From positions 186,001 through 250,000 of the IMG/VR virus record IMGVR_UViG_3300036853_000446: a stretch of DNA of 64,000 nt, one strand, 5' to 3'. The notes under the pieces are model-generated. The model was not told where the DNA came from. It saw nothing but the letters and a program-made list of their open reading frames with translations, and ran no database searches. Position 1 is the stretch's first letter. Every line of letters begins with the position of its first letter. Position numbers and translations under genes: made by a program. This document shows, piece after piece, positions 5,616 to 61,271 of this stretch.

Positions 5616-5975
5616 TTATTTCTTGACCTTGAATTCGTATCGACCGCGGCCGGCCCATTCGATCCAGTGGACCTCTGCGGCGGTTTGCGTTTTGCCGTCG
5701 TCGTATCTGACGTTGGCATTGCCTTTCCATTTCGTCCATTCATTGGCTTCCCCACCGTACTTGGCAGCCTTCTACGCGGCGTCTCTAAAGGGCTTGATTT
5801 CTTCGCGATGAGTGACCTTGCTTGTGACGATAAAGCCTCTTGGTTTTCCGTGGGCAAGCTCGCCGCGATACTGCTTAGGTGGTTTGGGTCGCTTCGTTTT
5901 CGGGTCATCGGAGGGATCTTGCGCGGCGAGAAATCTCTTTGTAACGCGGTACGCGAGATTGTCATAACGTCTCAC
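5616..5975 (-). pseudogene. Leader-bearing putative nuclease toxin (MuF C-terminal type) interrupted by in-frame TAG at 5772-5774
   Basis: Reading through the TAG gives ...RVTKRFLAA...FRDAA*KAAKYGGEANEWTKWKG..AEVHWIEWAGRGRYEFKVKK*. Confidence 0.7.
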
Positions 5976-5983
5976 ACAACGGA

Positions 5984-5991
5984 CGCATCAA
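5984..5991 (-). promoter_or_regulatory. TTGATGCG motif upstream of leader-bearing gene
   Basis: Identical 8-mer at 53538-53545 and 56374-56381, also upstream of leader genes. Confidence 0.55.
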
Positions 5992-6099
5992 CAAACGCCT
6001 TATTGTAACACAAAACGGAGTGCAACGCCGCTTCCCGATCGCAACCTCGAAAACTATCGTAGCTCGTAACTTTCGCAACTATTCAGTAACGGCTTGGCA

Positions 6100-6606
6100 A
6101 TGACCATCCAGTACGTCGTGGGGGACGCGACCCGTCCGCAGGGGCCCGGACCCAAAGTTCTCGTCCACTGCGTGAACGACATCGGCAAGTTTGGCGCGGG
6201 TTTCGCTCTGGCCATCAACTCCCGCTGGTCTCGAGTTGCGGAGTCGTATCGGGAGTGGCATCGGACCGGTAGCTCTCCCCTGGTCCTGGGTTTGACGCCG
6301 AGCGCCGAGCCGACAACGGCCTTTCACCTTGGGGCCGTTCAATTCGTCGAGGTCGAACCGAGCCTCTGGGTCGCCAACCTCATCGGGCAGCACAAGACCA
6401 TCAGCGACGGCGAGAAGGTGCCGGTCCGCTACGAGGCACTGGAGATGGGCCTTCAGACGGTCGCGGTATTCTGTGACCGCCAGCAGGCCTCCGTCCACGC
6501 GCCGCGGCTCGGGGCGGGGCTCGCCGGAGGGCGTTGGGACAGGATCGAAGCCCTTCTGAAGCGCACGCTGCGAGGACGATCGGTGACGATTTACACGCTG
6601 CCCTGA
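6100..6606 (+). CDS. Macrodomain (Appr-1-p / ADP-ribose processing, TARG1/Poa1-like)
   Basis: YVVGDAT, VHCVNDIGKFGAGFA, APRLGAGLAGGRW. Confidence 0.9.
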   Translation: MTIQYVVGDATRPQGPGPKVLVHCVNDIGKFGAGFALAINSRWSRVAESYREWHRTGSSPLVLGLTPSAEPTTAFHLGAVQFVEVEPSLWVANLIGQHKTISDGEKVPVRYEALEMGLQTVAVFCDRQQASVHAPRLGAGLAGGRWDRIEALLKRTLRGRSVTIYTLP

Positions 6607-6677
6607 CCCGACCGTTGCATGAGAAATCTTCTAACCACAACCTTTGCAATCTCCTCGTCCACCTTCGCTAGGCGCAT
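6591..6677 (-). CDS. Leader-only micro-ORF
   Basis: MRLAKVDEEIAKVVVRRFLMQRSGQGSV; TCGATGAG upstream at 6717-6724. Confidence 0.35.
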   Translation of the reverse strand: MRLAKVDEEIAKVVVRRFLMQRSGQGSV

Positions 6678-6753
6678 CGCGGGTTTTCCATAGAGCGTAT
6701 GCTCTGAAGCCGAACGCTCATCGACTATGCGCCGTAGAGATCCGCAAACACCA

Positions 6754-7128
6754 TCACGCACTCTTCTTCGCGCGTTTCTTTGTTGCCGTGCGACTCGCCA
6801 TGGGTCCACGTTCCAGAGCTTCGGGCGTAGGACGGGTGAAGAGAAATTCTGCTACGATGACACGAAGTAGCGCGTGGAGCGTTATCATGCGATGAGAAGC
6901 CTCGGCTTCGAGTTGATCCCACACATCGTTGGTGAATCGGAGCGATCGAGTCGAGGTACCAATCGCCTTGTTTCCCTTCGGCGGCCGTCCACGGACTGCT
7001 CGTGTGAACGCCAGAGCGTTTGCACGGCCCTCAACCCCGTGCCCGAAGGTGCGCGTGGCGTCCCCTTCGTTATCGGCCTGCAACGCTTCTAGTCGCTTTG
7101 CGGTGGGATCCTTGTCATCAACCTTCAT
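6754..7128 (-). CDS. BrnA-like/RHH antitoxin
   Basis: RGRPPKG..TRSLRFTNDVW..L RHH-like C-terminus; overlaps the BrnT stop. Confidence 0.75.
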   Translation of the reverse strand: MKVDDKDPTAKRLEALQADNEGDATRTFGHGVEGRANALAFTRAVRGRPPKGNKAIGTSTRSLRFTNDVWDQLEAEASHRMITLHALLRVIVAEFLFTRPTPEALERGPMASRTATKKRAKKSA

Positions 7129-7384
7129 AACGTTTCCTTTGCGAGGGCGTGGCAACCCACGCGGTGATGATCTCAGCGTGTTCGTTGTCGACAATCTCGA
7201 CCGTGACGACATACAGCAGCCTTTCGTGGTCTGAGTACCCGATGAAGTTCATCCGCTCGGGGTGACGCAAATTTGGCTCGAAGTAGACGTCCGGATCGTT
7301 GTACGCGGTCTCGGCTTCCTCGAATGAAACGCCGTGCTTGCTGAGGTGCTCAGCCGCGTTCTGCTCATCCCAAGTAAACTTCAC
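7118..7384 (-). CDS. brnT: BrnT family toxin
   Basis: FTWDEQN..HLSKHGVSFEEA..ERMNFIGYS..LLYVVTVE..IITAW. Confidence 0.85.
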   Translation of the reverse strand: MKFTWDEQNAAEHLSKHGVSFEEAETAYNDPDVYFEPNLRHPERMNFIGYSDHERLLYVVTVEIVDNEHAEIITAWVATPSQRKRYEG

Positions 7385-7685
7385 ATTAAAGAGTAACACT
7401 AATTATCGTGGAGAGCAACGTCCGAAGCCAAACGGGCACGAACAGGCCGCCCGGGCCCGAGAGTCCGGTATGCAAGTGCTTGAAATCGTTATATAGAAAG
7501 CGGCAGAAAGGCATAGTCCGCTTCCGACGGGAGTTTCCGACATCTTGGGCCAAAGAGGCCCGTTGGCCTGATTGGGGCCATCGGGGGCCAACCCGAGCGC
7601 GGACGGTTTGGAAGCGACTGACGAACTCGTTGAAGGTCCGCGTTACTCAACTGTCCAATGGATCGACCCGGTGTATTCCCCGGGC

Positions 7686-8006
7686 ATGAAGAACTTCGAC
7701 CCAGCCACGATTCGTCCCCTCTGGAACCGCGTCCTCATCGAGGAAGACCCCAAGCCCACCGTGAGCGAGGGCGGAAGCATCATCCTCCCGTCCACGGCGC
7801 GCGACGCCAAATACTTCACGCCCGCGACCGTGCTCGCCGTCGGTCGGGGCAAGCTCCTGAAGAGCGGGAAGCTCGTCGAGATTCCCTTCAGGAAAGGTGA
7901 CCGCGTCGTACTCGGGAAGCGCCAAGGCGTCGAGGTTCATGGCGAGCGCATTCGGATGGTCGACGTCGATACCATCGAAGGTCTGTTAGAGGAAGAATCT
8001 GCGTGA
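7686..8006 (+). CDS. groES: Co-chaperonin GroES
   Basis: IRPLWNRVLI, GGSIILP, VLAVGRG, KGDRV; CGGTGTA 10 nt upstream. Confidence 0.9.
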   Translation: MKNFDPATIRPLWNRVLIEEDPKPTVSEGGSIILPSTARDAKYFTPATVLAVGRGKLLKSGKLVEIPFRKGDRVVLGKRQGVEVHGERIRMVDVDTIEGLLEEESA

Positions 8007-8275
8007 TTCACGCGGATCCGAAAGAGCTGCTCGAGAAGCTCGTCCTCGCACGCGAGATGGTTCAGGTGGGTGGCTCTTACCGCCACCGCATCACGGGCGC
8101 GTTGTATCGCGTGCATCTCATCGTCATGCGTGGGGAGAAACTGGAGCCCGCGGTCGTCTATTCTGCGGTGGACGGGCCCGCAATCCCTTGGGATCGAAAA
8201 CTCACGGTTTTCCTCGAGCGCTTTCACCTCGTCGAGTTCTCGGCGTTGCCTCCTATCGATCCACCCGAAGTCTAA
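8003..8275 (+). CDS. DUF1653-like protein
   Basis: GGSYRH..GALYRV..EPAVVY..WDRKLTVFLERF. Confidence 0.7.
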   Translation: MIHADPKELLEKLVLAREMVQVGGSYRHRITGALYRVHLIVMRGEKLEPAVVYSAVDGPAIPWDRKLTVFLERFHLVEFSALPPIDPPEV

Positions 8276-8279
8276 GATC

Positions 8280-8621
8280 ATGAGCGAGCCCTCTTCTCCG
8301 TGTCTCGTGAAATATAGGGCCTTGTGTCATCAACCAGCGCCGCCCGAGATTCGAGAGAGTACGTGGACGATCCTCGCGGCGTGGATCGGTGATCACGTGG
8401 CCCAAGATGCCCTCGTCGAGACTTATCGGGAAATGTTAAAGGAACTTGGCCCCATCTCGCAAGCAAAGGAGGGCACCCCCGCGGGACTCCTTGCCGAGGC
8501 CATCAGAGACGCCGCTGACGTCGTCTGGTATGCCTTGGACGAAGAGCATCTCGAGATGCTCGATGAAGTTGTGGCGGAGCTGGCCAAGCTGCCGGCAGAA
8601 AACAACCCGCAACCCGAGTGA
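8280..8621 (+). CDS. Hypothetical protein
   Basis: Co-directional ORF directly after DUF1653. Confidence 0.6.
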   Translation: MSEPSSPCLVKYRALCHQPAPPEIRESTWTILAAWIGDHVAQDALVETYREMLKELGPISQAKEGTPAGLLAEAIRDAADVVWYALDEEHLEMLDEVVAELAKLPAENNPQPE

Positions 8622-8656
8622 AAGTCGACATCGTTGATTCGCGCCGTAACGCCTGT

Positions 8657-9301
8657 CTAGCGCAGACCTAAATCTTGCGCGCGGTCGTGGTGGCCCTGCA
8701 CCGTCCACGACCGCGTGAGTGCGCCTTGGAGTAAGTGCCCGAGTTCGTGCTGAAGCGTCGTTTGCGACAAGGGCTCGACCGATCGCCGGTAGCTGACGAC
8801 CATCTTGTGTGAACGCGCCACGTCGAACCCGGGCAGCGGCATCTTCTCGCCCGCGCAGCAGCTCCCCGCGAGGTTCGGCTTCAGCCAGACCCAGAACATG
8901 GCGCCGTCCGCGAAGTCGCGAATCTGCGACCATCTGAAGGCCTTCTGCCAGCAGTCGAAGGTAAAGAAGAACTGGCCGATGACCACCTCGGGATCGAGAG
9001 CCCCCTTGTAGCTGCCCGGGTGGATCATGACCGAATAGAAAGGTCCCCGGATGTAAATGAACGGCTCGAGCAGTCGGCGTCTCCGCCAGAGAAGGTTCGC
9101 GTAGACGGCGGTCACGCCGAGCAGGAGGATCCCGAGCGTCCCTTGCACGCCGATCAATCCGGCGGGTAGTCCCCAGGCCTTGGCAGTGCTTTGGCATCTT
9201 GACGTTCCGGCGCACAGCAAGGCGATGAGGACGAGCGGGACGAGCGAGCCCGGGAACAGCAGGTCCTTCGAAGTCAGCCAACGCGGTCTGGACGGCGGCA
9301 T
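8657..9301 (-). CDS. Membrane-anchored zincin-like protein
   Basis: Two N-terminal hydrophobic segments; LQHELGHLL (HExxH). Confidence 0.6.
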   Translation of the reverse strand: MPPSRPRWLTSKDLLFPGSLVPLVLIALLCAGTSRCQSTAKAWGLPAGLIGVQGTLGILLLGVTAVYANLLWRRRRLLEPFIYIRGPFYSVMIHPGSYKGALDPEVVIGQFFFTFDCWQKAFRWSQIRDFADGAMFWVWLKPNLAGSCCAGEKMPLPGFDVARSHKMVVSYRRSVEPLSQTTLQHELGHLLQGALTRSWTVQGHHDRAQDLGLR

Positions 9302-9304
9302 GAC

Positions 9305-16333: not shown

Positions 16334-16663
16334 CGGTCGCAGAGCCGCAGAACCCCGTCTTTTCGCAAGCGGAGTGCGCGGTATCGAAGTGCAGAGGAAA
16401 GCGGCCAACCACCAGGGTTGTGCCGTTCCTCATTCTCCAGCGACGATGCTGGATCGTCCGCTGCGCTCGAGGCGCAGCAACGCATGGACCCGAAAGTTGA
16501 CTTCGAGTTGTGGGGGAAGAGACGCATTCACTAGGCTCCTGTTCAGGATATCACTAGTGACCGGTCTCCTTTTTCGTCTGTGAGTTCAGCAGCATGACAG
16601 CGCCGGTGAGCATGACGCCGCCCCGAACGATGTCAAGTCGAGTCGCCGGTGTAGAGCCTTGGC

Positions 16664-17945: not shown

Positions 17946-18162
17946 GGGTGGCTGCCTCGCCGTATCGAGAGTGTTGAGAATCCTCTTGTGTGTCGGCTGG
18001 TTGGGGCCCGTCGGAAGCAGTCATGATGGGCGGCCGTCCCGACAACGACGGGCCCCACCAAATAACCTAGGAGAGACATCGCCGGATCGCAAGCAGCACG
18101 GTGCACCGAGCACGGTGAGGGGACGATCAGGGGGAGGCTCCGGCGCGGTGTATGAGAACGTT

Positions 18163-18313
18163 GCCCAGGCCGGGCGACTAGAGTCGTGGGAGAACCGCGG
18201 ACACGTTCAAATTTGCGTCATTGAACACGCCTGGCCTGGGCACCTCTCTTTAGGATGGCTGCACCAGCTCGTACCATCGCTTAGAATGCCCCTTCGGGGC
18301 TCCCGACGAGCTG
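18163..18313 (+). ncRNA. Candidate structured non-coding RNA
   Basis: 15-bp closing stem 18162-18176/18228-18242 enclosing three hairpins; second domain 18265-18272/18306-18313; CGGTGTA at 18146-18152. Confidence 0.5.
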
Positions 18314-18352
18314 CCTCTTGAGTTCCGTCTGTCGAGGGGCTACGAGAGAGCG

Positions 18353-19708: not shown

Positions 19709-20856
19709 AGAATGGCCTCGAGCATCGCAACCTGGTCGTCCGGCAAGAGGTCCTCGCAGTAATATGCGATCATCTCGGCGAAGTTCTCTTCGGGAGTCGT
19801 TGCGGCGTACGGCGAAACGAAGACGCTGGTTTCCGGATGCTTCTGCCCAATGAAGGCACCGAGATCCATATGCGCGCCGCGGCTGGGGTCAGCCTCCCGC
19901 GCCAGCTCTACGACGGGGCTCTTTCCCTTGTAGCTCACGCCCTTGACGACGTAGGTAACACCGTTCTCCGTGATGGTTTCGCCCCCACTAGGCCATTTGC
20001 TTCGATCCTTCAGCAGGTCGAGGTCTGCCCTCTGCTTCTTATGCGCCAACTGGCTATAAAGGCCGTGGATCTCGCTATTCTTGCTCTGAAGGAACTTCTT
20101 GTGGAGGCGATGACCCAGTTCGTGCGTCACGCTCAGCACTGCCGGTCCCTGCTTGCCCTTCAGGTTGGCCCGGATGTAGAGGGTGTCGTCGCTTGGCCGG
20201 TAGAAGGCCAGCACGCGCGTCGATCTGCCCACCGAGTTGGTAACCTGGATGCTACCGTAGCAGATACGGGCGAGTCCCTTGCTATGCAGCAGCTTGACGG
20301 ATTTCTCGACAACTTTGGCGACGTCTGCCATCGCCGCAGGAGCGAAGCCGCCGGTATTGATCAGCTGGAAGGGTCCCGCCTCGAGGACCGTGTCTCCGCC
20401 CTCTTCAGAGTGTTTGCTCCCACTCGTCAAAACGCGACGGACGGTCGCCGCGAAAAGTCTATATTCATCGAGCGTCTTGATGAAGACCTCGACCGCCTTG
20501 TCCTCCTTGATGCGGTTGACCTTTGATTTGGCAAATGTCTTGGCGGCACGCTCGACAATCTTGCGATCCTTCGGAACCATCGCGTACTCGCGAAGAACGT
20601 CCAAGAACATTTCGTAAGCGCCATGCCTCCGCATGTAGTCGAACACACCTTGAATGACGGCCCCAAGTCTGAGGCGGTCGTACACGTCCTTGGGATCCCG
20701 GGCCCTCTCTTCGTGCTTCGCTAAGCCTTCGACAAAGGCTTCGAACTGACGGAGAAGCTGCAGCGTATCGCCCGCCACTTTGTGGCGGCGGTCATAGTCA
20801 TAGACGGGCTGACGACGTTCATAGCTCCAAGGCACCACGTCCAAGGCCGCTGACAA
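19705..20856 (-). CDS. Leader-bearing zincin metallopeptidase
   Basis: WSYERR..YDYDRRHKVAG leader; THELGHRLH and SPYAATTPEENFAEM. Confidence 0.8.
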   Translation of the reverse strand: MSAALDVVPWSYERRQPVYDYDRRHKVAGDTLQLLRQFEAFVEGLAKHEERARDPKDVYDRLRLGAVIQGVFDYMRRHGAYEMFLDVLREYAMVPKDRKIVERAAKTFAKSKVNRIKEDKAVEVFIKTLDEYRLFAATVRRVLTSGSKHSEEGGDTVLEAGPFQLINTGGFAPAAMADVAKVVEKSVKLLHSKGLARICYGSIQVTNSVGRSTRVLAFYRPSDDTLYIRANLKGKQGPAVLSVTHELGHRLHKKFLQSKNSEIHGLYSQLAHKKQRADLDLLKDRSKWPSGGETITENGVTYVVKGVSYKGKSPVVELAREADPSRGAHMDLGAFIGQKHPETSVFVSPYAATTPEENFAEMIAYYCEDLLPDDQVAMLEAIL

Positions 20857-21040
20857 GAGGAACCGTCAGTCGATCGTCGATGCAGCGCCCGAGATCTCCT
20901 TCGGAATCCAACGGACCGCAAATCCAAACAAACAGACCAACACCGCGTCGGCACACGAGAACAAATGAGGGACGTCTTTTCGGAGTTTAGTGTCGAGGCC
21001 CACGCGAGCGCCGCCTAGAGTCGGTGTACTTGCCAATCGC

Positions 21041-22129: not shown

Positions 22130-23661
22130 TCAGTCGGTCCCTTTGATCGAGCACACGGGGTAGAGACGGTTCGCGACGCGCGCGATCCCGCACTGCTCGA
22201 GCACGGATAAAACCTCGTCGAGGTCCTTGTAAACGTGGGCGCACTCGTCGAGTGGGGTCTTCTTGTAATTGCCAACGATACCCTCGACCGTGACGCCCGC
22301 GAAGGTTCTTTTGACCGTCGCCATTTCGTTGTCGATGCGGGCCTGCTTGTGCTCAAATTTGTTCTTAGCCTTGCCCCGCGCCATGAGTCGGCCCGAGCCA
22401 TGATTCACGGAGCAGCCCGCGCCGTACGCCCCGGCGAGCGGGAACAGGATCGCGGCGCCCGTGTACATCGAGCCCGGGATGAGGCAGGGGTGGCCCGTGG
22501 TTTCCCATCGGGACCCCGCGAGGTCGGGATGCCCGGCGGGGAAGGCACGTGTCGCCCCTTTCCGATGGACGAAGCCCTTCTTCGTCGTGCCGTCGGGCAG
22601 CACCAGGGTTTCCTGCTGCACGAGGTTGTGACTGATCTCGTAGTAGACCTCGCCCTGGACGTCGAAGACTTCCTCGAGCGCCTCTTGAATCCCTTGCACG
22701 ATGATGTGCCGGTTGGCGATCGCGTAGTTGGCGGCCGAGTTGTGGTACGCCCAGTATTCCTTGCCGAGGGGCTCGTCGGCGCGAAGCCACGAGTCCTCGC
22801 GGCGCTTCATCGGGAGCCCACGGAGGCGGGCACCTTCGATGAAGAAATGATCGGCGATCTGGTGACCGTAACCGCGCGACCCGCAATGCACCATGACCCA
22901 GACCTCTCCCGTGTCACGGTCGCACTGAAGCTCGACGAAATGGTTACCCCCGCCGACGGACCGAGCTGAGGCAGGGCTCGTTTGCGTGCAGTCTCGACCT
23001 TGTCGAGGTCTAGCCCGTCTTGAATGGGTATGTACTGCCGCTCGCAAACGTCCGCCTTGACGCCCAGCGGCTTGGCGCCGTAGCGCAGGATCTCGTCGAG
23101 CTGCGTGTCGTTGAAAGTCTGCATCATCTCTACGCGGTGCGAGCCGACGCCGGTTGCGATGCGCTTCTCGACCTCGCTGATCCAGCGCCCGCGGCGCTCT
23201 TTGCTCTGGACCTTCTTTGCCGAAAGTCCGGGCACCTTTAGGGACAAGATCCCGCAGTTCACGTCGTACCCTGAGCCCGCCTGAATGAGCGTGTCGTCGG
23301 TGACGATCACGCTGCCCACCGGGACGCCAAAGCCAACATGAGTGTCAGGCATCAGGTACGCGCCAGTAACTCCTTCATAGGAAGCTCCGTTTGCGATCTG
23401 CTGCCAGAGCCCTTCGTCCGACGCCGCATAGAGCGCGTCCGACAAGAATGCGTGGACCTCGGTCTTCATCGAGGCCACCTTGGGCAGGACGTAGTGATTC
23501 TCGCCGGTCTTCACCGCGGTGTATTTGAAGGACATGAGCGCGCGAGGTGTATACTCCAAAGATTCGTGGACTACCACTGTCGGCGCCCGCTCCTCCTGAG
23601 TTTGGCGCCCCACGAATCGCTCGACCGCGTGTTTCGTAATGATCGGTTGGGAATCATGCAT
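22130..23661 (-). pseudogene. rtcB: RtcB RNA ligase split by a 1-nt frameshift near 22960
   Basis: MPDTHVGFGVPVG, GYDVNCG, GGGNHF, HCGSRG, HRKGATRA, NHGSGR, DECAHVYKD spread over two frames. Confidence 0.9.
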
Positions 23662-23741
23662 CGGAGATTCGCTTACACCGGTAAATCTCCTCGAGCGTCG
23701 CGTCCGGATCAAAACCCGTGTGTGGCCCGTATTCGGCATTG

Positions 23742-24623
23742 ATGATGAAGGATTATGCAATCCAGCGCCCGGGCAAAGAACAGAAGGGGCGATCGTTCCG
23801 AGCCACCTGTGTTGCCGTTGCGACGGCCAACAGCCTTTGGGATGAGGGGGGCAAGGATGGCGCGATCCGGCCCGTCTGGGCGATGTTTGCGGGGACCGAA
23901 CAAGAGCTGCGCCCATTTGTGGCCAACCTCAAATCGGGGCGTAAAGCCGAACCCGCCGAGCAATTTTGGAGGGGCGGCGACAATGAGCGCTTCGAGTTTC
24001 TGCGCTCCGTCGGATTCGTCGCGTCCTGGCAGCGGGAAGCCGAGGGCTCCCTCGTGACGCTGTTTCATCCGGAACTCTTTCGACTCGATCCGGGGCTCAT
24101 CGAACCCTCCACTATTCGTTTCCTCCTGTTCGTTCCATCGGATTGGTCGGACGCGCAGCGGGTCGACGTCGCTAGTGCCGTTCGACACGTGCAACCGTTG
24201 GCGCCAAAGCTCGAGGAAGGTTACCTTTCCAGTCTGGTCCCGACGGCCTACCTCTTTGCTGCCTATCTCGACCGGCGCACGCGCGCGCCTCTGGTGGCCG
24301 ACGGCCGCTTCTACCTGCAGCTACTCCTGTCGGCTCTCGACCAGGGGCTCGCGTCTCTCCCGGGGAGAGACATCAAATACAACCGTTCCTCCCGTGACCA
24401 GTGGGGATTTCACAATGGTCACGGCTTCGATTTCGAGATGGGTGGCTCGAGCTGGAGTCCGCTCGGAATCGACTCCATCGGGCTCGCGCACGTGATCTCT
24501 TTCAACTCGACGCACACCGTTTTCGAACAGTTCCTCGCCGAGCAAGTGACCCAATATTTCGCCCGCGTGAAGGGCAAGACGCGGCGCGGGAAGATTGACC
24601 TTTCCGCCTTTGCCGCCGGTTGA
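23742..24623 (+). CDS. Hypothetical protein upstream of the MTase-helicase
   Basis: 293 aa ORF divergent from rtcB. Confidence 0.7.
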   Translation: MMKDYAIQRPGKEQKGRSFRATCVAVATANSLWDEGGKDGAIRPVWAMFAGTEQELRPFVANLKSGRKAEPAEQFWRGGDNERFEFLRSVGFVASWQREAEGSLVTLFHPELFRLDPGLIEPSTIRFLLFVPSDWSDAQRVDVASAVRHVQPLAPKLEEGYLSSLVPTAYLFAAYLDRRTRAPLVADGRFYLQLLLSALDQGLASLPGRDIKYNRSSRDQWGFHNGHGFDFEMGGSSWSPLGIDSIGLAHVISFNSTHTVFEQFLAEQVTQYFARVKGKTRRGKIDLSAFAAG

Positions 24624-24663
24624 TTCCGGATCAAATCCCAACTCTGACCCGTACTACTTTCAA

Positions 24664-29286: not shown

Positions 29287-29436
29287 GATCCCCTGGAGTT
29301 TGGATCAACGGCAGACAAAGGAGAAGCCATGGTCTAAACCTGTGGATCTCAGTCAACATCGCGGCACCCATGCGACGCGAATACCAATGTAGGTTTTTGG
29401 AGTCTATTGACGCCATCGATCGCGATTATGTCAAAG

Positions 29437-34365: not shown

Positions 34366-35238
34366 TTACTCCTCGAACATCAAGTGAATGGGCGGGCGTC
34401 GGTAGCGCTCGGCCTCGGGCACGGAAGAGACTCGATAGAGCCGCTCGGTGCGTGGTCCCTTCGTCCCGCCGCTCACTTTGAGCGTCGCCGGGGCACTCCA
34501 GATACAAGCACCAAGCGGGAAATCATACTCGGACACGAAGACGTCCGTGTGGCGCGACCACTCGGCGACACGAGCCCGAAAGGCGTCCTGATCGAAGGAT
34601 GGCACGCCATCATAGCCCGTCGTGCCGGCGTACGGCGGATCACAGTAGATGAGTGATTCGATCGGGCGCGGGGCGACGGCGAGAAAGTCGACGACGGCGA
34701 ACGTCATCGAACGATCCGTTGCTCGCCGATCCAGCATCCGGAGGGACGAAACCACGGCGTTCATGATTGTACCTCCGTGATGCGTCGCCGTCTTCGGTGA
34801 CGAGCGAGGGCCCGCGTAGCCGCCGAACCACTTGCCGCCGAAAGAGCAGCCGAAGCCGCAGAAGGCCTTCAGAGGGTCGCTGTCGGGCAGGACCTTGGCA
34901 GCGGTCCAGGTCTCCCTGCTGACGACGTCAGGGGGCTGCCAGCCGCCCTGCACGGCGGCGTAGAGGGAAATGAGGGCGGCGTTGACGTCCGTGGCGTAGA
35001 CGGGCCCATCCTCCTCGAGCGCCGCGGCCACCGACAGGCCCCCGCAGAAGGCGTCCCAAACCTCCTGCCCTGGCCGGCGGTAGTCGAGCATCACGGCCGC
35101 GAGCTGCTTGGCGACGAGCGTTTTGCCACCGAGGTACTGCATCTCGGAGCGAGGTACACCGTTCCTCAGGAATGACCGGTTTGAGGGCTGATCGTCAAAG
35201 GTGTCGCGAGCTGCCCGCGGCTTCAGGGTCAGAGGCAT
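34366..35238 (-). CDS. Dam/D12-class DNA adenine methyltransferase
   Basis: MQYLGGK, DAFCGGLSV, YCDPPY. Confidence 0.9.
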   Translation of the reverse strand: MPLTLKPRAARDTFDDQPSNRSFLRNGVPRSEMQYLGGKTLVAKQLAAVMLDYRRPGQEVWDAFCGGLSVAAALEEDGPVYATDVNAALISLYAAVQGGWQPPDVVSRETWTAAKVLPDSDPLKAFCGFGCSFGGKWFGGYAGPRSSPKTATHHGGTIMNAVVSSLRMLDRRATDRSMTFAVVDFLAVAPRPIESLIYCDPPYAGTTGYDGVPSFDQDAFRARVAEWSRHTDVFVSEYDFPLGACIWSAPATLKVSGGTKGPRTERLYRVSSVPEAERYRRPPIHLMFEE

Positions 35239-36750: not shown

Positions 36751-36845
36751 ACCACAAAGCGCGTGACGACGGCGAGATCGAAGCGGCAGAAGTCATCGAG
36801 CAGCTCGAGCGCACCCCGGAACTTTTTATCGCCCGAGAGCTTATT

Positions 36846-37163: not shown

Positions 37164-37427
37164 CTCCCAGAACGAACCCGGGCGACTCGTCAGCTCATTA
37201 TCTCGCGTCTCTTTCATCCCGTCTCAGAGGGAGGGTCCATTTGCAGGATCGCGTGCTGCAGCGCCTCGAGATCCTCCGCGGACAATTCGGAAGAGGCTTG
37301 GCCGATCGTGGTCGGCGCGGAGTGGGACGGCCTTAGCGCGCTAGGGCGAGCGGCACGCGCCGAAACCACTTGGAAAGACGCTTCTCCGGATCAAAAACTA
37401 CCGGAGCATCCGTACTGATTAGCAAAC

Positions 37428-42165: not shown

Positions 42166-42221
42166 TTGGCCTACCCTTAGCCGCGAATCGATGAAAAGCG
42201 ACCGTGGGGGCCTCGGGCGCC

Positions 42222-42913: not shown

Positions 42914-42949
42914 AGAGCGGTCCAGATTTTATTGTTCGTCAGCGAGAGT

Positions 42950-42982
42950 ATGTCTCTCGCACATCGGGTTGCTGCCCGTAGG
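42950..42982 (+). pseudogene. Leader stub MSLAHRVAARR colliding with the 3' end of the opposite-strand ART gene
   Basis: ATG at 42950 after TTTTATTG; frame runs antisense into 42985..43773 and stops at 43093. Confidence 0.5.
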
Positions 42983-42984
42983 AC

Positions 42985-43773: not shown

Positions 43774-44025
43774 GACAAGGTCGTAGCAGCAAAGGATTCG
43801 CCTTCAATCGCGGACGCGGCTTTGCCAAAAATTGCCCGGGCAATAAATTTTGGAAATCGCACCCTTTCCGGCTGCTGGTGGACCACCTTCAAAGTCGACT
43901 ATAGGGAATTCGAGAGCGCTCGGGCGCCGATATTACGGAAAATGACGACGATTGGGTCATTTACGGACGCCGTGCAAGACGACTGAACCGTGGTGGTGGT
44001 AGGCCGGCGATTGAGGTTCCCCACG

Positions 44026-47668: not shown

Positions 47669-47821
47669 GTGATCGGTCGTGCGGGGGAAGTCCCCACCCT
47701 CCACTCCCTGAGTACGGGTCGGAGGGGCAGCTTTGATCCTATGAAATTCAGATGGATCAAACCTGGGGCTTCAACTCGTACTCGAGGGAGTGGTGGGTGG
47801 GAACCGGTGTAGTGAGGGGGG

Positions 47822-52760: not shown

Positions 52761-53507
52761 CTAGCCACGATCTCGATCCGACTTCGCTTCTTCCTTACGG
52801 TATTTGTCTCGATCCTTCTCGTAACGCTCCTGCGCCTTGTCTCTCGCGTCCTCGAGCGCATCCGTGTGGACGTGCTTTGCACCTTGGGAAGTCATATGTG
52901 CCGCGAAGTCAGCCATGTCCGGGCCCCCGGATTTGAACTCCACTTCAAAGACATCGTCACCCGATTGGCAGCTCATGACGCCGTTGCCGCTGGTATCCGT
53001 GTTTAGGTTGAACTTCATCTTCGATATGGGCTTCTTCTTGTCCGTGCCTTGGGTATGCAGCAGCCGCTCCACGTCCTTTTCACTGATTTTCGAGGCATCC
53101 CCGCCGCGCGCCAAAGCACGATTGACCCCTTCGTGGTCCTGCTTGTCGCGAAGCTTGTTCAGCTCGGCTTTCGTGGCCTTCTGACCCCCCGGCTTGGCTT
53201 CATCCTTCGGCTTCTTCTTACCCTCATCCTTGCCGTCGCCCTTCTCCCCCTTGGGCGCGTCCCCCTTCGTCTCCTTCGTCTTGACCTTGTGCTTCGAGTG
53301 GTCCGCTTTCGGATGTTCGTGAAGGTATTTCTCGAGCGCTTCCGGTGAGGAATGCTCCATGGACGTCACGGAACGCCGTGCAACGCGCTCGGCCAGGTCA
53401 TTCAGAGCCGACGCGACCCGCACTCGAGAAGGGGCCTCGCTTCGCGCGTAGGCTAGGAGAGCCCGAAGCTCGTGTCGTAGATCTCGAGGGGAAGCGATCT
53501 TGTTCAT
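52761..53507 (-). CDS. Leader-bearing charged protein (KIAS family)
   Basis: MNKIASPRDLRHELRALLAYARSEAPSRVRVASALNDLAERVA. Confidence 0.75.
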   Translation of the reverse strand: MNKIASPRDLRHELRALLAYARSEAPSRVRVASALNDLAERVARRSVTSMEHSSPEALEKYLHEHPKADHSKHKVKTKETKGDAPKGEKGDGKDEGKKKPKDEAKPGGQKATKAELNKLRDKQDHEGVNRALARGGDASKISEKDVERLLHTQGTDKKKPISKMKFNLNTDTSGNGVMSCQSGDDVFEVEFKSGGPDMADFAAHMTSQGAKHVHTDALEDARDKAQERYEKDRDKYRKEEAKSDRDRG

Positions 53508-53609
53508 GGTGGGGAAGTCCTTTTCTCGTACAACCGGCGCATCAATGGATTTGGCAACGCGATCCAGAGCTAACCAGGGCACGGATCAAACCGTTGGGCT
53601 CGCCCGTAC

Positions 53610-53969
53610 TTGGCTTTGCCCCCTATGAAAACCCCCCTCATCACGGTTCGCTCTGCCGGCTCCACGCGCCCCGGCTTTGCCCAAATCACGTTACAGGTCT
53701 CGACGGTTAGCGACCCCGCCACCAGCCACGACGAGTGGATCACGGGGCTTCGCGAGCGGCGCGCCCTCACCGCCGCCGTCTATTGCGTGGCCGCCCGTCT
53801 CGAGCAGATCGCTAGCACGGAGGCCCTCGAGTTAGAAGTCAGCGTCGGCCAAATCCGGCTCGGCGTCATCGACGTCGACACCCGCAAGGACGCCCTCGAC
53901 GACGACATCATCACCGAAATCGTCATCGAAGCCTGCGTCGATTGCGGCTTCACGCTCGCCGATCAGTAA
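53610..53969 (+). CDS. Hypothetical protein
   Basis: 119 aa ORF. Confidence 0.55.
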   Translation: MALPPMKTPLITVRSAGSTRPGFAQITLQVSTVSDPATSHDEWITGLRERRALTAAVYCVAARLEQIASTEALELEVSVGQIRLGVIDVDTRKDALDDDIITEIVIEACVDCGFTLADQ

Positions 53970-55965: not shown

Positions 55966-56346
55966 TCAAATCAAACGCAAGTCCCTTTCAATCATGAATC
56001 CGAAATGAAGGACGGTGTCTTGGACATGACGTCGGTGCTTGGCCCATTGTCTCTCCAAATCCCTGTCACCACCCTTGGCCTTGGCGGCATTCTCGAGTTC
56101 CTTTACCAATACCTCAGCTTTTGTGGCAGCGTCCAAGGCTGATTTCAGGTGCTTCTTCAGCGCACTCAGCTGGGCCTTGTTCTCGGAATCAAAAGCCCCA
56201 GCCTCCTTGACGAGCCCTAACCCTTCGCTCAAGGTCTGAAGCTCACTTGCAATCCGTACACGTGATGGGCGCCCACCCTCCGTGTAGGCAATGAGACGCC
56301 GAAGCTCATGCTGTAGCTCTTGGGGGGACGCGATCTTGTTCATCAT
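55966..56346 (-). CDS. Leader-bearing small protein (KIAS family)
   Basis: MNKIASPQELQHELRRLIAYTEGGRPSRVRIASEL..VKEAG. Confidence 0.75.
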   Translation of the reverse strand: MMNKIASPQELQHELRRLIAYTEGGRPSRVRIASELQTLSEGLGLVKEAGAFDSENKAQLSALKKHLKSALDAATKAEVLVKELENAAKAKGGDRDLERQWAKHRRHVQDTVLHFGFMIERDLRLI

Positions 56347-56456
56347 GGGTGAAGGCCTTTCGCCTCACGTCGGCGCATCAACGGATTCTTGGGTGTGGGC
56401 CCCGTGGAATCGCGCAGTCCCGCACTCGCTCCCACGGGCTCGGTGTAGCTCATGAC

Positions 56457-57809: not shown

Positions 57810-58074
57810 CCGGGTAGGATCGCACGCCTCCGCGACGACGAATAGGGCTTCTGCCGATCAGCCTTGTCCCAAGGGCGGCCCCTCGTACCGTTCGAGCGTT
57901 GGCCTTGGGCAACACGAGCTGAGAGGTCATGCCCCTCAGTTGGTCAAACCGATGAATTTCATCGTTCGCGAGATGGGGGACGCCTGCCGAGGCCTTGGGG
58001 TGTGTCACTCTGATTCAGTCTAACAAGATCAGATGACCCTTGACGGTCTCTCAGGATCGTATAGAGTGCGTCCC

Positions 58075-58485
58075 ATGACCGTCCAATACGTCTTCAACCC
58101 CGACCGCGCCCTCGAGCTGGGCATCATCACCATCCTCGTTCCCCCCGACTCGTCTTCCAGCGCCGCCGCTGGGAACGACGTCTCCGACGCGCTCTACCAG
58201 AAGTTCCTGAGCTACCTCCCACGGGGGGAAACGGACATCGGTCAGCGTCACGTCGCGCAATTCATCAAAGAGAGCCTCGACGGCGTGACCATGTCGGCCA
58301 TCAGCTCCCATTTCGGGATCACGCCAAACAGCGCCTCGGGCATCATCAACGGCGGCTTGCAAGCCAACATCAAAAAGGCCGGCTTTGCCACGGTCGATCC
58401 CATCCTGAAGATCGAGAAACGGGGCCGCCAGTGGCACTACTCCCCCGGCGAGGTCCTCTGCCGGCAGCCGCCCATCCCTTTGTAA
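58075..58485 (+). CDS. Putative winged-HTH protein
   Basis: GVTMSAISSHFGITPNSASG; TTGACG-N16-TAGAGT promoter at 58040-58067. Confidence 0.6.
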   Translation: MTVQYVFNPDRALELGIITILVPPDSSSSAAAGNDVSDALYQKFLSYLPRGETDIGQRHVAQFIKESLDGVTMSAISSHFGITPNSASGIINGGLQANIKKAGFATVDPILKIEKRGRQWHYSPGEVLCRQPPIPL

Positions 58486-58629
58486 GCGCGTCGCTCGCCA
58501 CCTTCAGGTTCCCACACGCCACTCCGGCTCGCACCACGCACTCGTCGCAATCGAATGGCTCGCTAAGGATCGCGATTTACAAAAACTCGCTAGAGAAGGC
58601 CGACACTGCAAGTAGAGACCCCGCATATT

Positions 58630-58986
58630 TTACAACCGCGCTAGCGAAGCCTTGAGAATCGTTTTGGCTGCGGCCTCGGCTTGTGCCTTGGCGTCATCTC
58701 GACTCTTCGCTTCGCCATCCTTTAGGGCTTTTACCGTCGTTCCCCCTTTTGCCTCTACGCCATACACCACCCACGCATCATCGTGTGCAACCAGTGAGAG
58801 CGAACCCAGATTCGCGACATCTTTTGCCTTTAGCACGGGTTCCCATATCGACGTGGCGGCGACCCGGCGACTGAGTTCGAGAAGGCTTCGGCTCAGAGCA
58901 ACTCGCGAGGGTTGGTGACCTCCCGCGTGATCGAGCAGCTGAAGCAGCTCATGCTGAAGGTCGTTGGTCGTTGCGATTTTGCGCAT
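58630..58986 (-). CDS. Leader-bearing small protein (KIAS family)
   Basis: MRKIATTNDLQHELLQLLDHAGGHQPSRVALSRSLLELSRRVAA. Confidence 0.75.
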   Translation of the reverse strand: MRKIATTNDLQHELLQLLDHAGGHQPSRVALSRSLLELSRRVAATSIWEPVLKAKDVANLGSLSLVAHDDAWVVYGVEAKGGTTVKALKDGEAKSRDDAKAQAEAAAKTILKASLARL

Positions 58987-59102
58987 GTTTACCTCTGCGT
59001 AGGGCGTCGATAAGAACAAAACCGTAAACGCTCGTCGGATGGTGCGTCAGACGAAGCAACAAGCGGCAACGGCGCACGCCCCTCCGGTGTAGAATCGTAG
59101 CC

Positions 59103-59399
59103 ATGGCAGATAAGCTTTGCTCGTGCACGGAGAAGGACCCGCCGACGGACGGCGCGATCGAGGAGTCTCACGCCGAGCGGCGCTTACGACTTCGGCCGCT
59201 CTTGTCGAGCCTCGAGAACCGAAAAGGCGGCAGCGCGTTCCTCGACCTCTGTGAGATGCTCCTCATGCTCTCCGACGATATCGACGGAAGCATCGAATGG
59301 GATCACCCGCGGGTCCTCGTAAAGATTCGGCAGATCGCGAACGCAAATCGCATCGCGAAGAAACGCGCCGCCGAGTGGAAGGGCAGGCGCACCGGATGA
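59103..59399 (+). CDS. Hypothetical protein
   Basis: CGGTGTA 11 nt upstream. Confidence 0.6.
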   Translation: MADKLCSCTEKDPPTDGAIEESHAERRLRLRPLLSSLENRKGGSAFLDLCEMLLMLSDDIDGSIEWDHPRVLVKIRQIANANRIAKKRAAEWKGRRTG

Positions 59400-59420
59400 G
59401 CTTTTCCATAAAACAACGTC

Positions 59421-59687
59421 TCATCGCGAGCCCTCGCCCGAGTTGCTCCCGAGGGTTTCGCGCAGGAGCCCGATCACTGCTTCGGCCTCCGAGCGCCGGA
59501 TCGTGATGGTCGGTGAGTCGCGTGAGGGCGGGCAAAACTCGCCGTTAGCTGCATTCAGCCAGAACACGCGGAAGGAGACGAACCGCCTGCCTTTGACTTC
59601 TATCAGCTGGATCTTGAGTTGCTCGGGTTTGCCGGAGCGAGATGCACGGGAAAACGAGATCTCACGAATCGTCCGAAAGTCCGCCAT
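59421..59687 (-). CDS. PC4/YdbC-like ssDNA-binding protein
   Basis: LKIQLIEVKGRRFVSFRVFW..ITIR. Confidence 0.65.
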   Translation of the reverse strand: MADFRTIREISFSRASRSGKPEQLKIQLIEVKGRRFVSFRVFWLNAANGEFCPPSRDSPTITIRRSEAEAVIGLLRETLGSNSGEGSR

Positions 59688-59853
59688 AGTAAATCGAGGG
59701 ATAGGTAAATGTTGATAATCATTGATGCTTATTCCCTCGTACGGTCAGGTTTGGCAATGTCCGAACGATGGTCAGTGGACAACTGAGCTTAGATCGGATC
59801 ACGGCCGCTCGTACACGGCCCTCGTACTTTTATAAACCAGGCGCGGCATCGAT

Positions 59854-60639
59854 TCAGACGAGCCGCTTCATCGCCTCGTATTTTTCGGGCGCGCGACGTT
59901 TCAGATCGGCGGGCTCCTCCACATAGGAGCGAAAGGTTTCGGCGAAATCTTCGATGTTCGGCCTAAACTCGGCGTAGTCGGAAATGAATGGCGGCTGTCC
60001 CCAGGGCGGTGCGAACAGGTCGACGTGGTGCTTCTCTTCGAGCGCATGTCCTAGCTCATGCGTGACAGTACTCACGAGAATAGAGACCGAGGGCGGCTTA
60101 CGGTCGTGCACCGATAGGCTCAGGACGCCGCCTAGGTCCCACGAGGCATCTTCGGTTCCCCGCGGTGGTTGCAAGTTGATCGTCCGGGCTTCCCCTTGGA
60201 AGATGGCCTTCGCAACCGGTTTGAGCTTCCCGAACGCTTTCTTCCACGCTTCGACGTACGCTCCCCCGTGTTCGAGCAATTCGAGGGACCCTCTGTACAC
60301 GACGTTCTTACCGGTTGCCGCCCGTAACGCGAGACAAGTCTCCTCGAACGATGCGGAGGGTTTCTTCCTCACCACACGCGCGGGTTTGACCGCATCGATC
60401 TTGTCCAAATCCTCGTCGAACACGCCGCGCGCTTGGAGCCAGGCCCGAAGCTCCGCCACTGGAAAGGGCAGCATACTCCCGATATCGAGTGCGCCACGCA
60501 GGCGCTTCAGCACAGAGAGACCGTTCGTGCTCCACTCCCGTACCTTCAATAACCGATCGACATATTCGATCGTGACCAGGGCGTCAGCGGCTCCTTCGAG
60601 GTATCGGGCAGCAACACGGAGGGCGAGGCGACGGTCCAC
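59854..60639 (-). CDS. Leader-bearing zincin metallopeptidase
   Basis: LALRVAARYLEGAA leader; THELGHALE and SDYAEFRPNIEDFAETF. Confidence 0.8.
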   Translation of the reverse strand: MDRRLALRVAARYLEGAADALVTIEYVDRLLKVREWSTNGLSVLKRLRGALDIGSMLPFPVAELRAWLQARGVFDEDLDKIDAVKPARVVRKKPSASFEETCLALRAATGKNVVYRGSLELLEHGGAYVEAWKKAFGKLKPVAKAIFQGEARTINLQPPRGTEDASWDLGGVLSLSVHDRKPPSVSILVSTVTHELGHALEEKHHVDLFAPPWGQPPFISDYAEFRPNIEDFAETFRSYVEEPADLKRRAPEKYEAMKRLV

Positions 60640-60949
60640 CTCCGACCGGAGCCCATGAATGAATTACCGTCGGGCAAGGCAGCAGCACCCCTGGTCGCCC
60701 CGTGGTGAGGCGTGGCCCTTCCCACGTCCCGAGCGACCTTCCACTAACCCGGGGCCCTCTCTAGCCCGTGCAGAGCCCGTCCTGTTGCAGACCGGCGGTC
60801 GTCCCTCGGATCAAACGTGCCGCGCCGCCCGTACTCTCGGTTGACTTTGAGCTTTCCTCAAGTCAGTTTAGGAGCGACAAGATGGCTCGCGTCATCCACT
60901 CCTGCTCCCCCAAAACCAATTCCCCTCGAACCGCGGTACACTCACCCAC

Positions 60950-61201
60950 ATGGCGCAATCCTCCAAAGCCTCGCTCCCGGTCGACCTTCTCGAGAAGGCT
61001 CTCGGTCTCTCTCCCGATGCGCGCTTGGCGCTGGCCACCGAGCTATTGGACAGCGTCGAAGGGTCCGACCCCGCTTGGGAGCAGGCTTGGAGTCGCGAAC
61101 TCGATCGCCGTGCCGCCGAGGCCGACGCTCATCCCGAGCAGGGAATTCCGTGGTCCGTGGCGCGCGCCCAACTCGAAGCCCTCGTCAGCCCGAAACCGTG
61201 A
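60950..61201 (+). CDS. Addiction-module antitoxin (TIGR02574-like); partner toxin truncated
   Basis: ALGLSPDARLALATELLDS..AWSRELDRR..IPWSV. Confidence 0.85.
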   Translation: MAQSSKASLPVDLLEKALGLSPDARLALATELLDSVEGSDPAWEQAWSRELDRRAAEADAHPEQGIPWSVARAQLEALVSPKP

Positions 61202-61271
61202 AGCCCATCGTTTGATGGCTTTGAGTAGGTCTCGGATAACGGGAACCTTCTTGTGCGTGGCCAATTTGAAG

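What the first reader, a model, noticed from the sequence alone, without database searches (positions are those of the whole stretch)
5975..61219. Second upstream motif (T-rich-[AG]T[TC]GA[TC]GC) linked to leader-bearing genes: putative late promoter
Seen: TTGATGCG at 5984-5991(-), 53538-53545(-) and 56374-56381(-); the first two share 18/22 nt (TTGATGCG[TC]C[CG]GTTGT[GA][TC]GAGA). Looser copies: TCGACGCC 59003-59010(-), TCGATTCG 42184-42191(-), TCGATGAG 6717-6724(-), TTGATGGC 61212-61219(+), TTTTTATCG 36823-36831(+), TTTTATTG 42927-42934(+), TCTATTGACGCC 29403-29414(+). None of the leader genes uses GGTGTA. Inference: two temporal classes, with leader-bearing cargo expressed late as expected for virion proteins.
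Basis: partly seen in the sequence, partly recalled or inferred. Interest (0 to 1): 0.6.

Follow-up and report, generated by a model that had tools for sequence, protein, structure and literature searches.

The report
Misdrawn edge of a phage promoter block

Summary
All ten strings are at the stated coordinates. As written, the motif is not more than chance. TTGATGCG occurs 4 times in the window against 2.55 expected. The regex [AG]T[TC]GA[TC]GC occurs 249 times in the genome, with 6 upstream of genes against 11 expected. An 18/22 match is expected about once among the window's upstream regions.

De novo discovery on the whole 407,634-bp phage genome finds three upstream motif classes:
- Class A: CCGGTGTA, 9-10 nt before ATG.
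- Class B: GGATCAAA-N13-CCGTACT, about 6 nt before ATG.
- Class C: one 12-nt block, G-R-W-T-C-C-W-Y-T-K-R-T, with no -35 partner, ending at least 13-15 nt before the start codon.

Four reader sites (53538, 56374, 36823, 42927) overlap strong class C blocks and 59003 abuts a weak one. The other five are not supported.

Class C is strand-specific and far above controls. It lies directly upstream of baseplate, fibre-like and head-module genes, and of 11 of 12 MNKIASP-leader paralogues. It is kept upstream of orthologues in related phages. DNA-metabolism genes use class A instead.

Timing and transcription start sites are untested.

The parts
53541..53552 (-). Class C block AAATCCATTGAT, 33 nt before ATG 53507.
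   Evidence: PWM score 13.5; about 30 genome positions score as high.
52761..53507 (-). MNKIASP-leader family gene, 248 aa.
   Evidence: N-terminus MNKIASPRDLRHEL.
56377..56388 (-). Class C block GAATCCGTTGAT, 30 nt before ATG 56346.
   Evidence: PWM score 11.9.
55966..56346 (-). MNKIASP-leader family gene, about 125 aa.
59010..59021 (-). Weak class C block TTTTGTTCTTAT, 23 nt before ATG 58986.
   Evidence: PWM score 10.0.
58630..58986 (-). MNKIASP-leader family gene, 118 aa.
36818..36829 (+). Class C block GGAACTTTTTAT, 16 nt before ATG 36846 (MSYSYDR gene, 105 aa).
   Evidence: PWM score 13.4.
42925..42936 (+). Class C block GATTTTATTGTT, 13 nt before ATG 42950. The ORF is only 47 aa (MSLAHRVAARR...) with a negative coding score, so it may be a remnant of a leader gene.
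   Evidence: PWM score 12.2; ORF details.
43788..43799 (-). Class C block GAATCCTTTGCT, 14 nt before GTG 43773 (262 aa, N-terminus VSRIARRVAARY).
   Evidence: PWM score 13.0.
60655..60666 (-). Class C block TAATTCATTCAT, 15 nt before GTG 60639 (261 aa, RVAARY-type N-terminus).
   Evidence: PWM score 11.8.
20853..20864 (-). Class C block GGTTCCTCTTGT, 8-17 nt before the start of a 376-379-aa gene of the 7-member paralogue family.
   Evidence: PWM score 14.0.
3898..3909 (-). Class C block GGATTTACTTTT, 17 nt before ATG 3880 (460 aa).
   Evidence: PWM score 12.0.
17978..17989 (+). The best class C block in the window, GAATCCTCTTGT. It is followed by about 360 nt without an ORF before gene 18353.
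   Evidence: PWM score 15.8; sequence and ORFs; fold z-score -4.1.
5984..5991 (-). No class C block, and the downstream ORF 5444-5965 has a negative coding score.
6717..6724 (-).
   Evidence: Best overlapping score -4.4; downstream ORFs are non-coding by score.
29403..29414 (+).
   Evidence: Score 3.0.
61212..61219 (+). By eye, GGAACCTTCTTGT at 61242-61254, 17 nt before ATG 61272, is a likelier block with one extra base. It does not score with the ungapped matrix.
42184..42191 (-). CTTTTCATCGAT scores 4.1, but it resembles the TAATCCATCGAT variant seen at the orthologous position in relatives L094 and L095.

Best explanation
The window is part of a 407,634-bp uncultured soil phage with a contractile-tail-type baseplate. 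RtcB similarity points to Myxococcota as a possible host.

Its consensus is G-R-W-T-C-C-W-Y-T-K-R-T, for example GAATCCATTTGT, GGTTCCTTTTAT or GAATCCATTGAT. I call this class C.

I think class C is the core of a phage-specific promoter made of one block with no -35 partner. It would drive the virion regulon and the N-terminal-'leader' gene families. The host RNA polymerase would read it after redirection by a phage factor that I could not identify.

Transcription would start a few bases downstream of the block. That gives either a very short leader (block end 14-15 nt from the start codon, often GTG) or a 25-70-nt leader with a Shine-Dalgarno sequence.

Shown: the motif, its strand bias, its position, its enrichment, its gene associations and its conservation in relatives.
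Inferred: promoter function, the start-site position, the 'late' timing and the recognition factor.
For: Discovery and enrichment:
- Expectation-maximisation on 243 upstream regions lacking classes A and B converges on the block from many seeds.
- At 13 bits or more there are 39 sites in the genome, 30 of them within 80 nt upstream and in sense of a called start (1.7 expected).
- At 11 bits: 44 upstream regions carry a sense-strand site against 14 with an antisense one; column-permuted matrices give 4.5 +/- 2.7; shuffled regions give 3.0 +/- 1.6.
- There is no information outside the 12 positions.
- Distance to the start codon has its mode at 14-15 nt (about 20 of the 70 gene-proximal sites) and a tail to about 60; 12 sites lie closer than 13 nt.

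Gene associations:
- Class C lies directly upstream of the baseplate wedge gene, a fibre/head-decoration-like gene, the acidic gene after the prohead protease (15.8 bits) and a conserved 375-aa head-module gene (16.0 bits).
- All nine DNA-metabolism genes tabulated in genome 43-136 kb, plus GroEL, have class A as the nearest upstream site.
- 11 of 12 MNKIASP paralogues have a class C block and none has A or B. Fisher p is about 1e-9.

Conservation in relatives:
- The 450-aa gene orthologues L025-L027 keep TAATCCTCTTGT or TAATCTTTTTGT at the same distance while the flanks differ.
- The 375-aa gene orthologues, at 48-71% protein identity, keep a TAATCC-type block (TAATCCGTTTTT, TAATCCATCGAT, TGATCCTTTAAT; TAGTTTACTTAT in L097 scores only 5.9) 50-68 nt before ATG.
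- Leader genes in other IMG/VR phages (L031, L033, L034) have the block 14-15 nt before ATG.
- In three related genomes the degenerate pattern occurs 38 times against 18 for the reversed control. Of 30 sites, 19 are followed by an ORF start within 70 nt (random 30%), and the commonest spacing is again 14.

Phage specificity:
- No phage RNA polymerase was detected.
- The block is 5-8 times less dense in three candidate host-type genomes.
Against: - There is no transcript or 5'-end data. No RNA run holds this phage.
- No sigma-like factor with a region 2 was found. The only hit is a protein with two tandem sigma region-4 domains.
- The portal and protease genes have only a weak class C block (10.3 bits), and class A sites lie nearer.
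- Major capsid, sheath and terminase genes were not identified, so 'upstream of capsid and tail genes' is shown only for part of the virion module.
- The matrix was trained on upstream regions, and my gene calls are home-made.
- A block ending 14-15 nt from the start codon does not sit where a canonical -10 hexamer of a leaderless mRNA would.
Confidence: 0.6

Rival explanations
1. There is nothing functional. The listed strings are chance matches, and the similarity between 53538 and 56374 is left over from duplication of paralogous genes together with their upstream DNA.
For: The literal motif is not enriched. An 18/22 match is expected by chance. The sites at 53538, 56374 and 59003 precede paralogues. 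Five of the ten sites have no support.
Against: The 12-nt block is about 10-15 times over every control I ran (shuffled regions, column-permuted matrices and random-position expectation) and about 3-5 times over the antisense strand. It precedes many unrelated genes. It is kept upstream of orthologues and in three other genomes while the flanks diverge. The paralogues are only 33-54% identical in the protein leader, so neutral upstream DNA would not have survived.
Confidence: 0.08
2. Class C is an operator, meaning a binding site for a phage transcription factor such as the tandem sigma-region-4 protein at genome 107861-108577. It would switch the virion and leader genes on or off, while the actual promoter core lies elsewhere in the region and is too weak to detect.
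For: It is a single block with no -35 or -10 architecture. A DNA-binding protein with two sigma-4-like helix-turn-helix domains is encoded in the genome. The block ends 14-15 nt from start codons, further upstream than a -10 hexamer of a leaderless mRNA would lie.
Against: No second conserved element lies within 35 nt upstream or 45 nt downstream of the block. The motif is asymmetric and strictly oriented with the gene, unlike most dimer operators. Distances to the start codon fall mostly at 13 nt or more, with a mode at 14-15, as expected if the start site is tied to the block.
Confidence: 0.17
3. Class C acts in the RNA. It would be a U-rich 5'-UTR element that enhances or controls translation, for example by binding ribosomal protein S1 or a phage regulator.
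For: The block is T-rich, strand-specific, and often 14-15 nt before start codons that lack a Shine-Dalgarno sequence.
Against: Many copies lie 30-70 nt upstream of genes that have their own Shine-Dalgarno sequence. In the 375-aa gene orthologues the block stays at the 5' edge of a leader of varying length. The best copy in the window has no ORF for 360 nt.
Confidence: 0.07
4. Class C is a host-type housekeeping (early) promoter element rather than a phage-specific late one.
For: No phage polymerase or complete sigma factor was detected, so the host holoenzyme must start transcription somewhere. The AT-rich 3' half could act as a -10-like element.
Against: It precedes virion genes rather than DNA-metabolism genes. 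It has no -35 element. It is 5-8 times less dense, and only about 1.7 times over its control, in three candidate host-type genomes. The host assignment itself is only a lead.
Confidence: 0.08

Closest known systems
T4-type late promoters: a single -10-like element TATAAATA read by gp55 with gp33 and the sliding clamp (from my own knowledge, not tested here).
   Same: A single short block with no -35 partner, placed upstream of virion genes, in a phage that relies on the host RNA polymerase.
   Different: The sequence is unrelated (GAATCCATTTGT against TATAAATA). No gp55-like factor was identified. The block ends 14-15 nt or more from start codons. Timing is untested.
Single-element middle/late promoters read by phage-encoded ECF-like sigma factors, as in phiEco32 (from my own knowledge).
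   Same: A phage-specific one-block consensus that marks a temporal class and is distinct from host promoters.
   Different: No sigma factor with a region 2 was detected here, only a tandem region-4 protein. The consensus is different.
Class A (CCGGTGTA-N9/10-ATG) and class B (GGATCAAA-N13-CCGTACT-N6-ATG) of the same genome.
   Same: They are also strand-specific and lie at a fixed distance from start codons.
   Different: The sequences differ. Class B is bipartite with an ECF-like -35/-10 layout. Class A precedes DNA-metabolism genes, and class B precedes small ORFs in genome 200-330 kb. Neither precedes a leader gene.
Bacteroidota housekeeping -7 element TAnnTTTG (from my own knowledge).
   Same: A T-rich block ending in TTTG, with weak or absent Shine-Dalgarno sequences downstream.
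   Different: Class C has C, not A, at the critical position (TCCATTTG). It has no -33 TTTG partner. The host lead points to Myxococcota, not Bacteroidota.

Membership tests
   249 copies in the genome, 6 within 80 nt upstream against 11.2 expected. TTGATGCG: 17 copies, 2 upstream against 0.8 expected. In the window, 4 against 2.55 expected.
   The positions after the 12-nt block carry at most 0.2 bit of information.
Class C block as a phage promoter | Strand-specific enrichment just upstream of start codons | tested here: met
   30 of 39 sites at 13 bits or more lie upstream in sense (1.7 expected). Sense 44 against antisense 14. Permuted matrices 4.5, shuffled regions 3.0.
Class C block as a phage promoter | Kept upstream of orthologues while the flanks diverge | tested here: met
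   Orthologues of the 450-aa and 375-aa genes, leader genes in other phages, and three related genomes.
Class C block as a phage promoter | Transcripts start at a fixed distance downstream | not testable with these tools
   Only DNA runs from soil metagenomes hold the sequence.
Late (virion) temporal class | Present upstream of virion structural genes and absent from replication genes | tested here: met
   Baseplate wedge, fibre-like, scaffold-like and head-module genes carry class C directly. The nine DNA-metabolism genes tabulated in genome 43-136 kb carry class A as the nearest upstream site. The portal and protease genes are exceptions, with only a weak class C block. Capsid, sheath and terminase genes were not identified.
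Late (virion) temporal class | Expressed after the onset of replication | not testable with these tools
   No expression data.
Sigma-70-type bipartite promoter | A -35 element 16-18 nt upstream of a -10 element | tested here: not met
   No information in the 35 nt upstream of the block.
T4-type late promoter system | A gp55-like late sigma factor encoded by the phage | tested here: inconclusive
   No Sigma70_r2 hit above threshold. Only a tandem sigma-region-4 protein was found. PHROG scans of 50 proteins gave no sigma factor; the only transcription-category match was an antiterminator family (phrog_6386) on the 108590-110434 protein. A specific gp55 model was not searched.

The most novel reading that the evidence does not exclude
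A clade of uncultured soil huge phages, possibly of Myxococcota, would run its virion regulon from a one-block promoter (GAATCCATTTGT-like). The block would be read through an unrecognised phage factor with no detectable sigma region 2. The same promoter would be coupled to two families of N-terminal 'leader' peptides (MNKIASP... and ...RVAARY), marking proteins made late and delivered into the virion. This would sit alongside two other promoter classes that yield leaderless mRNAs.
Probability: 0.3. Interest if true: 0.6.

Novelty: new member of a known kind. Interest (0 to 1): 0.42.

Why it matters
Uncultured huge phages have almost no functional annotation. A three-class promoter map splits about 450 mostly unknown genes into co-regulated sets. 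It corrects start codons: for example, the 1254-aa ORF at 24595 starts at ATG 24664, behind a class B site. It also gives a testable label, 'made with the virion', for the leader-bearing families and for dozens of unknown genes. The motif carries over to related phage genomes from other samples. It offers a concrete bait for finding the transcription factor that redirects the host polymerase.

Tried and rejected
- RNA evidence: the look-up of sequencing runs found only three soil DNA runs.
- Hallmark Pfam searches of the genome for Terminase_6C, Phage_capsid, Phage_sheath_1, T7-type RNA polymerase, RpoB and RpoC domains found nothing. For PF00940 the control genomes were also silent, so that blank says little.
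- The structure of the 450-aa class-C gene had pLDDT 43 and was unusable.
- The structure of the conserved 375-aa gene had pLDDT 68. The fold search gave only SH3-like matches to its N-terminus at E of about 0.1. Profile searches of PDB sequences gave nothing. Its role stays unknown.
- The 547-aa gene after the protease is acidic and of low complexity. I call it scaffold-like by position and composition only.
- The 12-sequence leader alignment was too diverse for the search for related loci. A 5-sequence subset worked.
- I considered that TTTATCG (the k-mer hit) was a separate motif. It is the 3' variant of class C.
- I considered a sigma-54 layout and a terminator U-tract. There is no GG/GC pair and no hairpin signal upstream of the block.
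- Two literature searches found no description of these motifs.

Full report
**What the window is.** The window is bases 186,001-250,000 of a single 407,634-bp record with 60.5% G+C. The tools identify it as an IMG/VR virus record, with CheckV completeness 86%. The only sequencing run that holds all of it is a soil metagenome. The window has no tRNA and no Rfam family. My own codon-usage gene caller gives 457 genes and 86% coding.

PHROG scans place the functional modules on a long minus-strand arm.
- Tail and baseplate genes lie at genome 1-40 kb: baseplate wedge, hub with tail lysozyme, a fibre/head-decoration-like protein and a lysin domain.
- Head genes lie at about 82-96 kb: portal and a prohead-protease-like protein.
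- DNA-metabolism genes lie at about 43-136 kb: helicases, methyltransferase, primase, clamp loader, exonucleases, NAD ligase and ribonucleotide reductase, together with GroEL.

No phage RNA polymerase was detected and no sigma region 2. The only related hit is a 238-aa protein with two sigma region-4-like domains. The phage RtcB is 80% identical to copies in Polyangiales (Myxococcota) MAGs. That is a host lead only.

**Checking the observation.** The statistics do not support a motif as written.
- TTGATGCG occurs 4 times in the window against 2.55 expected, and 23 of 100 shuffles do as well.
Only 6 lie within 80 nt upstream of a gene in sense, against 11.2 expected. TTGATGCG has 17 copies, with 2 upstream against 0.8 expected.
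- Shuffled versions of the window's 95 upstream regions give 0-2 pairs sharing at least 18 of 22 bases.
- The ORFs downstream of the 5984 and 6717 sites have negative coding scores and ordinary third-position G+C, so they are doubtful genes.

**What is really there.** K-mer enrichment in the 60 nt before all genes, followed by expectation-maximisation, reveals three upstream motif classes.
- Class A is CCGGTGTA. Its last base lies 9-10 nt before the ATG. There are 70 gene-proximal sites.
- Class B is bipartite: cGGATCAAA, 13 nt, CCGTACT, then about 6 nt to the ATG. There are 26-28 copies, all in genome 200-330 kb and around 385-393 kb.
- Class C emerged from the 243 upstream regions that lack A and B. 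It is a single 12-nt block, G-R-W-T-C-C-W-Y-T-K-R-T. Typical copies are GAATCCATTTGT, GGTTCCTTTTAT and GAATCCATTGAT. The ninth base is an invariant T. There is no information in the 35 nt upstream or the 45 nt downstream.

Four sites overlap strong blocks:
- 53538 lies in AAATCCATTGAT (13.5 bits).
- 56374 lies in GAATCCGTTGAT (11.9 bits).
- 36823 lies in GGAACTTTTTAT (13.4 bits).
- 42927 lies in GATTTTATTGTT (12.2 bits).

Site 59003 abuts a weak block, TTTTGTTCTTAT (10.0 bits). Sites 5984, 6717, 29403 and 61212 score 5.6 bits or less. Site 42184 scores 4.1 and is at best a variant.

**Is class C more than composition?**
- At 13 bits or more the genome has 39 sites. Thirty lie within 80 nt upstream, in sense, of a called start, against 1.7 expected.
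- At 11 bits, 44 upstream regions have a sense hit against 14 with an antisense hit. Two hundred column-permuted matrices give 4.5 +/- 2.7 (maximum 14). Shuffled regions give 3.0 +/- 1.6.
- The distance from block end to start codon peaks at 14-15 nt, usually with no Shine-Dalgarno sequence and often with a GTG start. A tail runs from 20 to 60 nt, and those leaders carry Shine-Dalgarno-like sequences.

**Gene associations.** Class C lies directly upstream of four virion-module genes:
- the baseplate wedge gene;
- the fibre/head-decoration-like gene;
- the acidic low-complexity gene that follows the prohead protease (15.8 bits);
- a 375-aa gene in the head module that is conserved in more than 180 metagenomic homologues (16.0 bits).

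All nine DNA-metabolism genes tabulated in genome 43-136 kb, plus GroEL, have class A as their nearest upstream site. A further exonuclease gene at 116462-117343 carries class A directly. The portal and protease genes are exceptions. They have only a 10.3-bit class C block upstream of their operon, and class A sites lie nearer.

Of the 12 paralogues with the N-terminal leader MNKIASPxELQxEL...PSR, 11 have a class C block of 9.9 bits or more within 90 nt. None has class A or B. The background is 58 of 457 genes, and Fisher p is about 1e-9.

A second leader type...RVAARY, is found in 12 genes. Five of them have class C directly upstream and none has class A or B. The others sit inside operons.

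**Related sequences.**
- Orthologues of a 450-aa class C gene, at 55-58% protein identity, keep TAATCCTCTTGT or TAATCTTTTTGT at the same distance in three large phage contigs, while the flanks differ.
- Orthologues of the 375-aa gene, at 48-71% identity, keep a TAATCC-type block 50-68 nt before the ATG (TAATCCGTTTTT, TAATCCATCGAT, TGATCCTTTAAT; the L097 copy, TAGTTTACTTAT, scores only 5.9). It sits at the 5' edge of a leader that ends in a conserved GGAGA.
- MNKIASP-type genes exist in other IMG/VR phages. Three of the five found have a class-C-like block 14-15 nt before the ATG.
- In three related records of 275-372 kb, the degenerate pattern occurs 38 times against 18 for the reversed control. 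Of 30 sites, 19 are followed by an ORF start within 70 nt, against 30% for random positions. The commonest spacing is again 14 nt.
- In three candidate host-type genomes of 7.6-8.9 Mb the pattern is 5-8 times less dense and only about 1.7 times over its control.

**Interpretation.** The best reading is that class C is the core of a phage-specific, single-block promoter for the virion genes and the leader-bearing families. The host polymerase would use it after redirection by an unidentified phage factor. Classes A and B would serve other sets: replication and metabolism genes, and a block of small ORFs.

The fixed spacings of A and B fit leaderless mRNAs, if the TA of GGTGTA and the CGTACT of class B are taken as -10 elements. 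That is inference, not data. For class C the start site, the factor and the timing are also inferred.

The main rival is that the block is an operator for a phage regulator, for instance the tandem sigma-4 protein. An RNA-level role fits poorly, because many copies lie far upstream of genes that have their own Shine-Dalgarno sequence, and the best copy in the window has no ORF behind it. Pure chance or paralogy explains the literal TTGATGCG motif, but not the block.

**Comparison with known systems.** In layout it works like single-element late promoters such as those of T4 (recalled from memory, not tested here). It is not a member by sequence, and no gp55-like factor was found. It is not a -35/-10 sigma-70 promoter. 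I found no paper describing these motifs. It is a new member of a known kind: temporal or functional promoter classes in large phages.

**Verdict.** 'Late' remains a reasonable but untested label.

Noticed in passing
Window 2471-2476(-), 4292-4297(+), 7670-7675(+), 16648-16653(+), 35155-35160(-), 47806-47811(+), 59086-59091(+) and others; genome-wide: Class A motif CCGGTGTA, with its last base 9-10 nt before the ATG and usually no Shine-Dalgarno sequence. There are 150 GGTGTA copies in the genome and 70 gene-proximal sites. It is the nearest upstream site for the DNA-metabolism genes. The spacing fits leaderless mRNAs.
   Followed up: partly
Window 23703-23736(+), 24625-24658(+), 37388-37416(+), 47711-47739(-), 47754-47782(+), 53580-53613(+), 60805-60838(+), 62760-62793(+); genome 200-330 kb: Class B bipartite motif cGGATCAAA-N13/14-CCGTACT, about 6 nt before the ATG, with an ECF-sigma-like layout. 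It moves the start of the 1254-aa methyltransferase/SNF2 ORF (24595) to ATG 24664. A divergent pair sits at 47711-47782.
   Followed up: partly
Window 52761-53507(-), 55966-56346(-), 58630-58986(-); genome 51163-51633, 146264-169749 (nine more): Twelve paralogues share a roughly 45-aa N-terminal module, MNKIASPxELQxELRxLLAY...PSRxRIAxEL..LAxRVA, followed by unrelated C-termini. One has DUF7007. The same module occurs in other IMG/VR phage contigs (L030-L034).
   Followed up: partly
Window 43773(-), 60639(-), 42950(+), 42165(-); genome 60976, 105489, 153422, 252860, 327070, 328791, 354030, 355160, 357333, 384332: A second N-terminal tag, ...(I/L)AxRVAARY/F..., occurs on 12 otherwise unrelated proteins, several of them starting with GTG 14-15 nt after a class C block. 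It is also seen in relatives (L110, L117). The 47-aa ORF at 42950 looks like a remnant that kept the promoter and the tag.
   Followed up: partly
Window 17978-18352(+): The best class C block in the window (15.8 bits) is followed by about 360 nt with no ORF. The stretch 17997-18352 folds at -167.6 kcal/mol, z-score -4.1, with 0 of 100 shuffles as stable. It may be a structured RNA or a long 5' UTR. There is no Rfam match.
   Followed up: partly
Window 4800-6090: About 1.3 kb with no ORF of positive coding score and lower G+C (0.53-0.55 in parts).
   Followed up: partly
Genome 107861-108577(-) (L020:1114-1830): A 238-aa protein with two tandem sigma-70 region-4-like domains and no region 2, beside the clamp-loader and exonuclease genes. 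It is a candidate transcription regulator.
   Followed up: partly
Window 22130-22894(-): The phage RtcB ligase is 80% identical to copies in Polyangiales/Myxococcota MAGs, which gives a host lead. One of the best hits is on a 264-kb contig of a MAG, which may itself be a binned phage.
   Followed up: no
Genome 1-126 and 407496-407621: The first 126 bases of the record recur exactly 13 bases from its end. The genome is probably complete and circularly permuted or terminally redundant, although it is listed as linear.
   Followed up: no
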